64,000 nucleotides of DNA, taken from Ylistrum balloti. Taxonomy: Eukaryota. The notes beneath the pieces are model-generated. The model did not search any database, had not been told where the DNA came from, and saw only the letters and a program-made list of their open reading frames with translations. Position numbers and translations under genes: made by a program. Positions 19,151 to 30,645 of this stretch are shown here, piece by piece (position 1 is the stretch's first letter; every line of letters begins with the position of its first letter). The stretch lies in NCBI RefSeq assembly GCF_031769215.1, contig NW_026782296.1:310001-374000 (forward strand), in the 5' to 3' direction.

Positions 19151-22100
19151 TTATTTAGACTTTAGTTGTTCCAGTTCCATAGAAAGTTGTTTGATTTCCT
19201 CCATAAAAATATCCTCCTCTTCCACAATAATGAGTTGTCTCATCTCCTGTTAAATGCAATAGAATTACACATAATCTATAATCCTTGTCAAGTAAGTGAT
19301 ATTCCAACATCAAATTATCTCCTGTAATACACTTCATTGGGAAAGTCAATCATTAAAAATGGTGAATTTTGCAGTCTATAAGAAAAGGACATTATTGTAT
19401 ACAGAAAACTTTACCACTTATTCCTTTTGGACAAACGCATCCATTTTTCTTCAAGTGTTTAACTTTGGAAGACATGTTTGATACTTAATTACTTATTCAT
19501 GGAAAACTGTATCAAACATTTCAACTTTTGCCATTTTGTGTTTATCATCACAAAAAGAGCAAAAGCTTAACTGTATGAATGACAGTGATTACAATATCCA
19601 TTTTTGGTCTTTTAACAGATTCTGGACACGAACTTGATGATTGTTTTTGCAAGATGGATAACAATATGGAAGTATACATACTTTGTTGGTCAGCACTTAG
19701 ACAGGTAAAAATTTAGTAAAAATAATGCAAAAAATAATGTTTTTCAGTATCAGAAAAGTGGCTTTAACAATTTTGTTCATATTAACATTTATTAAAACAA
19801 AAAATCATTGACTTGGCAACCTCAGTTGAAGATCCAAAATGTGTAGTTCAACCAAGTAATCTGGATGACATGAGACAGAGCTCCTGTAGTAAAGAGGCCA
19901 CCAGTAAAAATGGCTGGGAGGGATAATCAAAGCTCTATTAACTAAACTTTTCCCTCCTTGAAAAATTAAAAATGAAATGAATTGTTACCTGAGCAGACAG
20001 CAGAGATGTGTGTGCTCCAAACCTGTAGTAACATTCCCCGTCTTTTGTAGTGTACATGACACTATTGGGCACATGCTTTATGATGATCTCTATAGGAAGA
20101 ATATCAACAGCAAAGTACACATTCCGTCTTGGTGAGCATTTCGACAAGTAAAGATTCTTTTTTCAAAAATCAATTTCGCTCTGACAAAATTAATGGTGTT
20201 TAGCCAATAGAATGAAAACATTCACAATTTTTGTTGGAGTTATCAATTCAAAAATGTAAAAAAAAAAAACCTTCCTTGTTTAATTTAGTGAAAGATTCTT
20301 TTGGACAAAAAGACGAAACGACATTGCTTGTTTTCTGATAGAAATAACGATTTTTCTATTACAACAAAAAATACAGCAGAGCAGAATAATGTATGCCTAT
20401 CCTAGGCCACAGAGATATGAAGGGCTTATATGAAAATTATTTTCAATATGGAAATGGTAATGAGTCAAAAAGTCAAGAGCAAAAATAGTGCTATATCTTT
20501 ATATAATACACTAAATGCTATCAAACTTAAAAGAAATTGGAAAAAACTGGGGGAGGAGAAATCTGGACAGGATCAAAACGCCGAAAAAAACAAAGATCAA
20601 TAACGCTTTTCAAAATTACAAAATCAATATGCCATGAAGATAAACACAATTTCCTATCATGGTGATTCAGTCTGCAAAGTTTTAAAGAAATTGGTCGTAA
20701 ACTGGGAGAGGAGACCTCCTTACAAGATTAACATTATGAAGACAACAAGGGCAGTAACTCTTTCAAAATCACACTGCCATTCAAGAAAACACAAATTAAA
20801 ATCAAGAGCTATGGTAGGCCTGTAAAATTTCTGATAGCTGTATCTACTGAGTGATATAGATCTTTGATGTTGTTCATTAATGTGACACTTAAATTGCATT
20901 CAGTTCCCCTACCTGCCACAAAGAGATCTTCAACAGGCAAAAATGTGTCTGTTTCTTTGTCATGTTCCACAACAGGTGTATAAATAACATCAAACATGGA
21001 ATGAAGAACACAAGGTAATATTTTATCACACATCATCCGGTCCACACTAAGACGAAAATCGTCACGGTCATTTCGATTCAATTCCACACCGTGGACAGTA
21101 TTCCGAATTCCAATGTATATGCTGCCACCTTTCCCTACAAAAATGTAACATTGCTTTTACAACATGTATCAGGTGATTTCATTTCTAAGAAAATTGAGAG
21201 AATTGATAGAATTCAAACTTATATATTGTTTTCAATTGATTGAAAATATAAAACAACTTCCGATGCCAAGGCCAAATCTGATTTTGACAAAAAAAGATTT
21301 CTGTATAAATTTGTTCAGTGTTGAAGCATTGTAATCAGAATGGGATCCTATAGGAAATAAAAACCTCCATTTTTGTTATTTCTTTCATGATCTAAGAAAT
21401 TTAATAATGGTAACAGCAGCCATAAACACTTAAATGTTGTATACATACACATTTTATATTCTATTGTCCTACTTTCAGACACATATTCCACTGCTTCAAT
21501 AAGACAATAGACCCAAAAGTTGTGCAGTATATCGACAAGATTGTATTAAAAAAAGTTGGATGGCGCAGTGGTAACATAATTGCCTTTCACCAAAACGCCC
21601 GGTGTTCAATGCCAGGAATGGTTGTGAAAAGGTATGGGGTCACTAGCCCGACCTCTTGGGTTTTCCTCAGGTACTCTGGTTTCCTCCCACAGTAAGACCC
21701 CTTGCCACGTTCATCCGGGCCAACCAGAGTGATTAATATAAGTTTGAAAGTCACAATTGTTGTAAAATAAATAAGGTTTATTGTCATTAAGATTGTATCA
21801 AGTCATTTTAACACCAGTACAAAAGATTCAAACAGGGAAAATTATTCCTTTGCAAACAAGATAACTGTTTTCGATAGAAAAGGGACATACCAATGATACA
21901 AGGAATATACCACTGTTTAATATGGTAGCAAGAGATATACCACTGTTTAATATGGTAGCAAGGAACATACCACTGTTTAATATGGTAGCAATTGTCATAC
22001 CAATGTTTAATATGGTAGCAAGGGACATACCATTGTTTGATACAGTAGCAAGGGACATACCACTGTTTAATATGGTAGCAACGGATATACCACTGTTTAA

Positions 22101-30645: not shown

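What the first reader, a model, noticed from the sequence alone, without database searches (positions are those of the whole stretch)
19151..30645. Single-polypeptide ARM / extended Tudor / Schlafen (AlbA_2) protein: candidate small-RNA or piRNA-processing factor
The ORF track shows only fragments, but splicing gives one about 792-aa frame with ARM-like helices, an eTudor domain, more ARM-like exons, an acidic linker (WSDESDSDED), an SLFNL1-like AlbA_2 domain and a coiled-coil tail (seen). Schlafen domains are RNA endonuclease folds, and eTudor domains are hallmark germline/piRNA scaffolds. In C. elegans the Schlafen-domain nuclease PUCH (TOFU-1, TOFU-2, SLFL-3/4) cuts piRNA precursors and is recruited through the eTudor of TOFU-6 in PETISCO (established). 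Both modules in one lophotrochozoan protein would be a Rosetta-stone hint of an analogous RNA-cleavage system (inference). I do not recognise this architecture as a named gene.
Basis: partly seen in the sequence, partly recalled or inferred. Interest (0 to 1): 0.85.

Follow-up and report, generated by a model that had tools for sequence, protein, structure and literature searches.

The report
Ancient ARM–Tudor–Schlafen fusion protein gene
This scallop gene really does encode one protein that joins a protein-docking armadillo/Tudor module to a single Schlafen-type RNA-nuclease-like domain, and the same uncharacterised fusion is conserved from sea anemones to amphioxus, but nothing yet ties it specifically to piRNAs.

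Summary
Window 19151-30645 (minus strand) is a 12-exon GT-AG gene, Ylistrum balloti LOC132554787. My splice model reproduces the public 792-aa protein exactly. Pfam finds TUDOR and SLFN_AlbA_2 above their curated cut-offs.

Modelling refines the picture. One continuous armadillo solenoid (Z 27.5 to designed ARM proteins) carries an inserted extended-Tudor module. A ~110-residue disordered charged linker, a single Schlafen C-lobe-type AlbA_2 domain and a conserved terminal helix follow.

The fusion is not lophotrochozoan-specific: it occurs in Cnidaria, Annelida, Mollusca, Hemichordata and amphioxus. A bay-scallop gill metatranscriptome contig carries the whole ORF, so in that relative it is one mRNA, present in a somatic tissue.

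The piRNA reading is only partly supported. The PUCH/TOFU-6 facts are correct. However, the Tudor aromatic cage is degenerate across the family. Of the three residues essential for SLFN11 RNase activity, the scallop keeps two (E628, R630); the first is Asn with a near-invariant Asp beside it. No RNA run exists for this species.

Best reading: a partner-docked, probably dimeric, Schlafen-type RNA-binding or RNA-cleaving protein of unknown substrate. No paper in the library describes it. SLFNL1 orthology could not be tested.

The parts
29637..30645 (-). Exon 1 (aa 1-336): start codon, N-terminal ARM repeats (aa 7-135) and the inserted extended-Tudor module (aa ~138-340)
   Evidence: Open frame with donor GTAAGT at 29636. 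Pfam TUDOR 29.8 bits. Secondary structure and pLDDT 85-94. ARM match spans model residues 6..497.
28623..28709 (-). Exon 2 (aa 337-365): end of the Tudor module (conserved G-V-x-P-P-P motif spanning the exon 1/2 junction) and first helix of the C-terminal ARM part, with N357
28073..28240 (-). Exon 3 (aa 366-421): ARM repeat with N400. Its donor lies inside a 63-bp tandem array that repeats the donor in frame.
   Evidence: The residues SNLTECVLD are conserved in pectinid orthologues.
27501..27629 (-). Exon 4 (aa 422-464): ARM repeat with N448
26120..26342 (-). Exon 5 (aa 465-538): last ARM helices (to aa 495) and the basic start of the disordered linker
24917..24998 (-). Exon 6 (aa 539-566): linker
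   Evidence: pLDDT below 50.
23393..23462 (-). Exon 7 (aa 567-589): acidic tract WSDESDSDED; D571 is present in 20/21 family members
22734..22811 (-). Exon 8 (aa 590-615): end of the linker and N-terminal edge of the AlbA_2 region
22271..22384 (-). Exon 9 (aa 616-653): AlbA_2 first strand with the motif N623-D624-T-T-H-E628-L-R630, and helix ending in C648..L-N652-S-G
20913..21134 (-). Exon 10 (aa 654-727): AlbA_2 core with G656-G657, G662, G669, R674/R677/D678/R681 and D685
19989..20089 (-). Exon 11 (aa 728-761): last AlbA_2 strands, including invariant R750
19151..19246 (-). Exon 12 (aa 762-792 plus stop): conserved long helix, a candidate coiled coil
   Evidence: E772 is present in 20/21 members.
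21899..22277 (.). 30-bp x 12.6 intronic minisatellite that begins at the exon-9 donor and duplicates it in frame

Best explanation
This is one real gene for a 792-aa modular protein of an old, uncharacterised metazoan family.

Shown: an armadillo solenoid of about six repeats (aa 7-135 plus 346-495) has an extended-Tudor module (aa ~138-340) inserted between two repeats. A ~110-residue disordered linker, basic and then acidic, follows. It leads to a single Schlafen C-lobe-type AlbA_2 domain (aa ~611-758) and a conserved 30-residue terminal helix.

Inferred mechanism: the ARM groove keeps an Asn ladder at ARM periodicity (N357, N400, N448). Together with the non-canonical Tudor, it docks the protein onto one or more partner proteins of an RNA-protein assembly. 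The flexible linker lets the AlbA_2 domain reach bound RNA. Known Schlafen nucleases need two lobes and dimerisation, so the single lobe probably pairs through the terminal helix to form a working RNA-binding groove.

The ancestral protein was probably a metal-dependent endoribonuclease. Nematostella and amphioxus keep the full E-x4-[E/D]-x-[K/R] signature. In scallops the first Glu is Asn (N623) with a near-invariant Asp (D624) beside it, so activity in this species is plausible but uncertain. The RNA substrate is unknown.
For: Gene model: 12 exons, all GT-AG, exact match to XP_060075083.1.

One mRNA in relatives: contig L001 (2,841 nt, uninterrupted 789-aa ORF, 68% identical) comes from SRR23580857, which PMC10989825 describes as the Argopecten irradians gill metatranscriptome. 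L002 (3,132 nt, 867 aa) also carries one uninterrupted ORF with TUDOR and AlbA_2.

Domains: Pfam TUDOR and SLFN_AlbA_2 above their cut-offs in P0001. About 20 further full-length relatives were scanned; 15 score above both cut-offs and every one scores above at least one.

AlbA_2: the AF2 model has pLDDT 89.7. The top 35 Foldseek PDB hits are all SLFN11/12/5/13/14 nuclease domains, the SAMD9 tRNase domain or the AlbA_2 protein DIP2311. The profile aligns to the catalytic C-lobe at 32.8 bits, against 5.6 bits for the N-lobe.

Catalytic mapping: E628 is E or D in 19/21 members; R630 is R in 11/21, including the scallop and all deep-branching lineages; D624 is D in 19/21. The essential residues are E209, E214 and K216 in human SLFN11 (PMC9482658) and E204, E209 and K211 in pig SLFN11 (PMC10359600).

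ARM: Z 25-27.5, rmsd ~2 A over ~240 residues, model range 6..497. Asn ladder.

Tudor: the profile hits only extended-Tudor structures, and the structural neighbours are SND1, TDRKH, TDRD1 and TDRD10.

Dimerisation requirement of SLFN11: PMC9482658.
Against: There is no transcript, protein or functional data for this species. The only public run that holds the locus is genomic.

The first catalytic Glu is not conserved at its aligned position (acidic in 8/21 members, Asn in scallops). The third carboxylate position is Arg in scallops, although D252 is dispensable in SLFN11. SLFN5 keeps all three carboxylates yet is inactive, so residues alone cannot predict activity.

Dimerisation through the tail helix and peptide binding by the ARM groove are inferences from sequence and predicted models, not tests. 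I could not inspect model coordinates, so whether D624, E628, D678 and D685 cluster in space is unverified.
Confidence: 0.6

Rival explanations
1. The protein is a small-RNA or piRNA precursor-processing nuclease. It would be a one-polypeptide counterpart of C. elegans PUCH (Schlafen-fold nuclease) recruited through the TOFU-6 extended Tudor of PETISCO.
For: PUCH is a Schlafen-fold nuclease recruited through an eTudor, and that eTudor also has a degenerate cage (PMC10567574). The Tudor here is of the extended type that is typical of TDRD piRNA factors. The fusion is ancient, so a Tudor-Schlafen partnership predates nematodes. Published speculation exists that orphan SLFNL1-type genes have ancestral RNA-biogenesis roles (bioRxiv 2024.01.12.575368). 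Somatic expression is not an argument against this in molluscs (PMC6128900).
Against: No small-RNA, PIWI-interaction or germline-expression data are available. The aromatic cage and Asn needed for methyl-arginine PIWI tails are absent family-wide. The Tudor profile matches TOFU-6 only weakly (E 0.0044, rank 21), so there is no specific kinship. PUCH cuts the capped, individually transcribed C. elegans piRNA precursors (PMC10567574). From background knowledge, other animals are thought to make piRNA 5' ends with Zucchini/PLD6 or PIWI slicing. The only transcript evidence comes from gill. Extended Tudors also occur in non-piRNA proteins such as SND1.
Confidence: 0.2
2. It is a stress- or infection-triggered translation-inhibiting tRNase/rRNase, working like SLFN11/12/13/14 or SAMD9. 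The ARM-Tudor module would act as sensor or regulator.
For: All the closest solved structures are tRNA- or rRNA-cleaving immune nucleases. AlbA_2 nucleases are immune effectors from bacteria to mammals (PMC12680541). Molluscs have many short AlbA_2 proteins. The orthologue transcript is present in gill, a barrier tissue.
Against: The family looks like a conserved orthologous gene with a fixed architecture from Cnidaria to amphioxus, with 68-71% identity among scallops. That pattern is unlike fast-evolving, copy-number-variable immune Schlafens. Copy number in this genome was not measured. No STAND/NTPase, helicase or other immune signalling domain is present.
Confidence: 0.2
3. It is a non-catalytic nucleic-acid-binding scaffold. 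The AlbA_2 domain would only bind RNA or DNA, as in SLFN5 or the SAMD9 DNA-binding construct, at least in pteriomorph bivalves.
For: N623 replaces the first catalytic Glu, and R664 replaces the third carboxylate in scallops. Oyster and mussel also lack an acidic residue in that hairpin. Schlafens that lack one of the essential residues are nuclease-deficient (PMC9482658). A conserved Arg-rich helix, R674/R677/R681, suits binding.
Against: D624, E628, D678 and D685 are under strong constraint (19-21 of 21 members). R630 sits at the K216 position. Such retention of acidic residues is unusual for a purely binding surface.
Confidence: 0.3
4. It is a gene-prediction artefact. The Tudor-ARM exons and the AlbA_2 exons would belong to two neighbouring genes that were wrongly joined.
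For: No RNA evidence exists for this species. Intron 5 and intron 4 are 1.1-1.3 kb, and the linker exons are short and poorly conserved. The current Nematostella RefSeq model is 447 aa, against an older 940-aa model.
Against: Uninterrupted full-length ORFs sit on an mRNA contig from a related scallop's metatranscriptome and on a second, transcript-sized contig. The same collinear architecture is predicted independently in more than 20 species of five phyla. All splice phases are compatible, and no stop or start signal separates the halves.
Confidence: 0.03

Closest known systems
Vertebrate SLFNL1 (Schlafen-like 1)
   Same: It has a single C-terminal AlbA_2/Schlafen fold rather than the two-lobed core. 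It is an orphan, ancient and functionally uncharacterised gene. The Mizuhopecten orthologue (71% identical) carries the name 'Schlafen-like protein 1' in its source record.
   Different: SLFNL1 is described as having an unknown N-terminal region (PMC9256597). No ARM or Tudor is reported for it. Orthology was not testable here, because no SLFNL1 sequence could be retrieved.
Schlafen core nucleases (SLFN11/12/13/14) and the SAMD9 AlbA_2 tRNase
   Same: Same fold. The profile aligns to the catalytic C-lobe, and the E214 and K216 equivalents are kept as E628 and R630.
   Different: There is only one lobe, with no N-lobe, no zinc-finger bridging region, and no linker/helicase or STAND domains. The first catalytic Glu is Asn in scallops.
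C. elegans PUCH (TOFU-1/TOFU-2/SLFL-3/4) with PETISCO TOFU-6
   Same: A Schlafen-fold domain is combined with an extended Tudor that has a degenerate aromatic cage. Single-lobe Schlafen folds there must oligomerise to be active (PMC10567574).
   Different: The two modules sit on separate proteins in the worm and on one chain here. Similarity to the TOFU-6 Tudor is only weak. TOFU-1 and TOFU-2 were not compared. No piRNA evidence exists for this family.
SND1 / Tudor-SN
   Same: It is a single polypeptide that joins nuclease-fold domains to an extended Tudor. Tudor-SN and SND1 are among the best sequence and structure matches of the Tudor module.
   Different: SND1 uses staphylococcal-nuclease domains and has a complete aromatic cage. 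This protein has a Schlafen AlbA_2 domain, a degenerate cage and an ARM solenoid.
Peptide-binding armadillo proteins (importin-alpha, beta-catenin, designed ArmRPs)
   Same: Same solenoid fold at Z 25-27.5. Conserved helix-3 Asn residues occur at repeat periodicity.
   Different: A ~200-residue Tudor module interrupts the solenoid. No IBB, NLS-receptor or catenin features were found. The Pfam Arm repeat reaches its cut-off only in some orthologues (P0028, P0036, P0041), not in the scallop.

Membership tests
Schlafen AlbA_2 domain (PF04326) | Match to the family HMM above the curated cut-off | tested here: met
   41.2 bits against a cut-off of 25.3, aa 632-756. About 19 of the ~20 other full-length relatives scanned are also above the cut-off.
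Schlafen AlbA_2 domain (PF04326) | AlbA_2 / Schlafen fold | tested here: met
   The model has pLDDT 89.7. The top 35 Foldseek PDB hits are all SLFN, SAMD9 or DIP2311 AlbA_2 domains, E 1e-6 to 1e-3.
Canonical Schlafen core (SLFN groups I-III) | Two-lobed horseshoe core (N-lobe plus C-lobe) | tested here: not met
   There is a single ~150-aa domain. The profile aligns to the C-lobe (32.8 bits) and only marginally to the N-lobe (5.6 bits) of SLFN11. The region upstream of the domain is a disordered linker.
RNase-proficient Schlafens | Essential E209, E214 and K216 (human SLFN11 numbering; PMC9482658) | tested here: inconclusive
   The scallop has N623 (with D624 adjacent), E628 and R630. The full E..[E/D].R motif is present in Nematostella and amphioxus, and D..E.R in Sinanodonta and Solemya. 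Activity was not assayed.
SLFNL1 | Orthology to vertebrate SLFNL1 (reciprocal similarity or phylogeny) | not testable with these tools
   No SLFNL1 sequence was returned. The only link is a source-given name on the Mizuhopecten orthologue.
Extended Tudor (PF00567, TDRD/SND1 type) | HMM match above the cut-off and similarity to eTudor structures | tested here: met
   28.8-29.8 bits against a cut-off of 23, covering profile positions 8-121 of 121. The strongest profile hits (E below 1e-4) are all eTudor proteins: Tud, Tudor-SN, TDRD1, SND1, TDRKH/Papi and Spindle-E. Structural neighbours agree.
Extended Tudor (PF00567, TDRD/SND1 type) | Four-residue aromatic cage plus Asn for symmetric dimethyl-arginine binding | tested here: not met
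   Mapped through the Tudor-SN alignment. Cage position 1 is K274, never aromatic in the family. Position 2 is M284, Tyr in 7/21. Position 3 is A300, always a small or non-aromatic residue. Position 4 is Y303, Tyr in 15/21. The Asn position is Y305, never Asn.
PUCH/PETISCO-like piRNA 5' processing system | Sequence kinship with TOFU-6, TOFU-1 or TOFU-2, and a piRNA precursor substrate | tested here: inconclusive
   The TOFU-6 eTudor is only a weak, partial hit (E 0.0044). No small-RNA data exist.
Armadillo-repeat proteins | ARM solenoid fold with three-helix repeats | tested here: met
   Z 27.5, rmsd 2.1 A over 246 aligned residues to 6sa6. Importin-alpha and beta-catenin score Z ~25. Sequence-level Pfam Arm is above its cut-off only in orthologues P0028, P0036 and P0041.

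The most novel reading that the evidence does not exclude
The cnidarian-bilaterian ancestor had a Tudor-tethered Schlafen endonuclease acting in small-RNA or transposon-control RNA processing. Nematode PUCH plus the TOFU-6 Tudor would be its split form, and vertebrate testis-enriched SLFNL1 its truncated form. The scallop gene would then be a living example of the ancestral one-chain machine.
Probability: 0.15. Interest if true: 0.85.

Novelty: new variant of a known kind. Interest (0 to 1): 0.6.

Why it matters
Schlafen proteins are studied mainly as vertebrate immune tRNases. Their ancestral role, and the function of the orphan SLFNL1, are open questions (bioRxiv 2024.01.12.575368; PMC12680541). 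The discovery of PUCH linked Schlafen folds to piRNA processing through a Tudor contact. A Tudor-Schlafen fusion conserved from Cnidaria to cephalochordates shows that the pairing of these two modules is ancient and not a nematode oddity. It also offers tractable systems (Nematostella, oyster, amphioxus) in which to ask what a pre-vertebrate Schlafen domain does. The ARM solenoid with an inserted Tudor is an unusual scaffold in its own right. If the protein proves to be an ordinary RNA-binding adaptor, the value is a clean annotation of a widespread 'uncharacterized protein' family.

Tried and rejected
1. RNA evidence for this species. The one run that holds exon 1 (X1) proved to be genomic, with contigs collinear through the introns. 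Splice junctions and tissue expression could therefore not be tested directly.

2. SLFNL1 orthology. Three routes returned only short cnidarian, mollusc or unknown AlbA_2 proteins and no vertebrate SLFNL1: the amphioxus C-terminal query, the Atlas look-alike search and a profile search with a longer first sequence.

3. Pfam on single exons. The AlbA exons do not score individually. The spliced protein had to be reached through the database copy, P0001.

4. My first splice model used a GTAACC donor at 28097 and missed exon 8. Both were corrected from P0001 and orthologue conservation.

5. A two-gene artefact was rejected.

6. A canonical methyl-arginine-reading Tudor was rejected.

7. Literature searches for the gene identifiers, and for a Tudor plus AlbA_2 or Schlafen plus armadillo architecture, found no relevant paper.

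8. I could not inspect model coordinates, so spatial clustering of the conserved acidic residues, and a possible circular permutation of the SN-like part of the Tudor module (aa 138-216), remain untested ideas.
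Full report
**What is in the sequence.** The window is AT-rich eukaryotic DNA. On the minus strand between 30645 and 19151 there is one long first exon and a series of short open segments. Reading the boundaries by eye and assembling them in a script gave an 11-exon, 758-aa open frame with GT-AG introns and compatible phases.

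An exhaustive HMMER search with exon 1 returned a 792-aa database protein, P0001, that is 100% identical over exon 1. It is XP_060075083.1, 'uncharacterized protein LOC132554787' of the scallop Ylistrum balloti. It differs from my model in two ways: an exon-3 donor 24 nt further 3', and one extra 26-aa exon. With those two changes a 12-exon model reproduces P0001 exactly, and all 11 introns are GT-AG. The finding's coordinates are exactly the start and stop codons.

**Is it really one gene?** No RNA run of this species is available. The only public run that holds exon 1 is genomic, because its contigs run straight through the introns.

Indirect evidence is strong, however. P0063 is 789 aa and 68% identical. 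It is encoded as one uninterrupted ORF on a 2,841-nt contig (L001) assembled from SRR23580857. The source paper describes that run as the gill metatranscriptome of the bay scallop Argopecten irradians (PMC10989825). P0063 maps collinearly onto 10 of the 12 exons in the window, including the corrected exon-3 end and the small exon 8. A second contig of transcript size (L002, 3,132 nt, 867 aa) also carries TUDOR and AlbA_2 in one uninterrupted ORF.

The same collinear architecture is predicted independently in more than 20 species. A two-gene artefact is therefore very unlikely.

**Domains.** Pfam on P0001 gives TUDOR at 28.8 bits (cut-off 23, aa 223-337) and SLFN_AlbA_2 at 41.2 bits (cut-off 25.3, aa 632-756). 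The single AlbA exons do not score on their own.

An AlphaFold2 model of the full protein, built on a 21-sequence family alignment, has mean pLDDT 78.7. It shows:
- helical repeats at aa 7-135;
- a beta-rich module at aa ~138-340;
- three-helix repeats at aa 346-495;
- a disordered stretch at aa 497-610 (pLDDT about 30) that is basic and then acidic, and includes WSDESDSDED;
- the AlbA_2 domain at aa 611-758;
- one long helix at aa 760-791.

Structural alignment places the two helical parts in a single armadillo solenoid. Designed ARM proteins, importin-alpha and beta-catenin align at Z 25-27.5 with rmsd about 2 A over about 240 residues, and the model range is 6..497. The Tudor module is therefore an insertion within an ARM domain, not a bead between two ARM domains.

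Three nearly invariant Asn residues sit at ARM periodicity: N357 (19/21), N400 (19/21) and N448 (17/21). In importin-alpha-type and designed ARM proteins the helix-3 Asn ladder holds an extended peptide (established knowledge). I therefore infer a peptide-binding groove.

**The Tudor module.** A profile of the family's Tudor region has its strong matches only to extended-Tudor structures: Drosophila Tudor, Tudor-SN, TDRD1, SND1, TDRKH/Papi and Spindle-E. TOFU-6 is a weak match (E 0.0044). The Atlas model of aa 136-345 has SND1, TDRKH, TDRD1, TDRD10 and STK31 clusters as structural neighbours, aligned mostly over aa 213-343.

Using the Tudor-SN alignment, the four aromatic-cage positions and the Asn map as follows:

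| Cage element | Scallop residue | Across the 21 family members |
|---|---|---|
| Position 1 | K274 | never aromatic |
| Position 2 | M284 | Tyr in 7 |
| Position 3 | A300 | always small or non-aromatic |
| Position 4 | Y303 | Tyr in 15 |
| Asn | Y305 | never Asn |

The canonical methyl-arginine reader site is thus degenerate family-wide. The same is reported for TOFU-6, which binds its partner on the SN-like surface instead (PMC10567574).

**The Schlafen domain.** A separate model of aa 584-792 has pLDDT 89.7. Its 35 best Foldseek matches in the PDB are all Schlafen nuclease domains (SLFN11, 12, 5, 13, 14), the SAMD9 tRNase/AlbA_2 domain, or the bacterial AlbA_2 protein DIP2311.

The family profile aligns to the catalytic C-lobe of the Schlafen core, at 32.8 bits for pig SLFN11. 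It aligns only marginally to the N-lobe, at 5.6 bits. This is a single lobe, not a full core.

Mutagenesis shows that E209, E214 and K216 are essential in human SLFN11, that D252 is dispensable, and that dimerisation is needed (PMC9482658). The pig equivalents are E204, E209 and K211 (PMC10359600). Through the alignment these map as follows:

| Human SLFN11 | Scallop | Across the 21 family members |
|---|---|---|
| E209 | N623 | acidic in 8; the neighbouring D624 is Asp in 19 |
| E214 | E628 | E or D in 19 |
| K216 | R630 | Arg in 11, including scallops, oyster, mussel, Owenia, Saccoglossus, amphioxus and Nematostella |
| D252 | R664 | variable |

Nematostella and amphioxus have the complete E-x4-D-x-R signature. 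Further invariant residues are N652, G657, G662, G669, D678, D685 and R750, plus an Arg-rich helix with R674, R677 and R681. The AlbA_2 active site has been described as three to four acidic residues (PMC12680541).

I conclude that the ancestral protein was probably an active nuclease, and that activity in scallops is plausible but uncertain.

**Distribution.** Full-length members with both domains occur in these groups:
- bivalves: Mizuhopecten, Pecten, Saccostrea, Mytilus, Sinanodonta, Solemya, Mercenaria, Mya;
- gastropods: Haliotis, Patella, Aplysia, Babylonia;
- a chiton: Liolophura;
- an annelid: Owenia;
- a hemichordate: Saccoglossus;
- amphioxus: Branchiostoma;
- a cnidarian: Nematostella, as a 940-aa older model.

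The family therefore predates Bilateria. None of the hits I could look up was from a vertebrate or an ecdysozoan, but not all 60 hits were identified.

The names in source records are 'uncharacterized protein', 'Tudor domain-containing protein', 'Schlafen AlbA-2 domain-containing protein' and, for Mizuhopecten, 'Schlafen-like protein 1'. I could not retrieve a vertebrate SLFNL1 sequence, so that orthology is untested.

**Mechanism.** Shown: the architecture, the folds and the conservation pattern.

Inferred: the ARM groove and the non-canonical Tudor dock the protein onto partner proteins in an RNA-protein assembly. The flexible charged linker lets the AlbA_2 lobe reach RNA. The conserved terminal helix pairs two lobes, because known Schlafen nucleases work as two-lobed dimers or as hetero-oligomers of single lobes. 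The paired lobes would then bind RNA and, at least ancestrally, cleave it. I give this general reading about 0.6.

Three more specific readings are open:
- a stress or immune tRNase role like SLFN11 or SAMD9 (about 0.2);
- a non-catalytic binder in pteriomorph bivalves (about 0.3; this overlaps the general reading).

The orthologue's transcript in gill shows somatic expression. Molluscs express PIWI and piRNAs ubiquitously (PMC6128900), so this does not settle the matter.

**Comparison with what is known, and novelty.** The nearest functional analogies are three.
- PUCH with TOFU-6 has the same two folds, but on separate chains.
- SND1/Tudor-SN joins a nuclease to an eTudor on one chain, but with a different nuclease fold and an intact cage.
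- SLFNL1 has a single C-terminal Schlafen lobe and an unknown function.

This protein is a member of the AlbA_2 and PF00567 Tudor domain families. It is not a canonical two-lobed Schlafen and not a canonical methyl-arginine-reading Tudor.

Full-text searches found no paper that describes a Tudor-AlbA_2 or ARM-Tudor-Schlafen protein. The Schlafen and SAMD9 evolution papers do not mention Tudor at all. The sequences and their domain hits are already in public databases, so I rate this as a new variant of a known kind: real, conserved and uncharacterised. Its link to piRNAs is an attractive but unsupported hypothesis.

Noticed in passing
window 21899-22277: A 30-bp x 12.6 minisatellite begins exactly at the exon-9 splice donor (the exon ends at 22271). 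It repeats the GTATGT donor in frame, and the frame stays open through the whole array (182-202 aa of LNSGMSLATI-like decapeptides). Orthologues and the Argopecten mRNA have LNSG-KGG contiguous, so only the first donor appears to be used. Using a later donor would insert 10-aa units into the core LNSG-GG motif.
   Followed up: partly
window 27883-28094: A 63-bp x 3.4 tandem array overlaps the 3' end of exon 3. It repeats the exon's donor (28073) at 28010 and 27947, again in frame (63 nt is 21 codons), with the frame open through the copies.
   Followed up: partly
window 23599-24261 and 18490-19135: A 60-bp x 11 array lies in intron 6. A 46-bp x 14 array (97% matches) begins 16 nt beyond the stop codon, probably in the 3' UTR. 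This gene is unusually rich in minisatellites.
   Followed up: no
window 22868-23067 and 26468-26867: In genomic run X1 these intronic stretches have a k-mer depth of about 9,800 and about 100, against a background of about 11, with many loose ends. They are interspersed repeats (short transposable elements) in introns 7 and 4.
   Followed up: no
P0090 (552 aa, ENA) and an Atlas cluster of 88 members: RRM + AlbA_2 fusion proteins also exist. According to the PUCH paper, TOFU-6 has an RRM as well as an eTudor, so both TOFU-6 domain types are found fused to Schlafen folds elsewhere. RRMs are very common, so this may mean little.
   Followed up: no
P0033 versus P0080 (Nematostella): The current RefSeq model of the Nematostella gene is 447 aa (ARM-Tudor half only), while the older model is 940 aa and includes AlbA_2. 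Either an isoform or split exists, or the annotation changed. This is worth checking with Nematostella RNA-seq.
   Followed up: no
window 9276-9875 (+): A 199-aa ORF with a Rossmann-like N-terminus (VLGVDTAVGAAVA...) resembles an exon of an NmrA-like or short-chain reductase gene. It belongs to a neighbouring gene.
   Followed up: no
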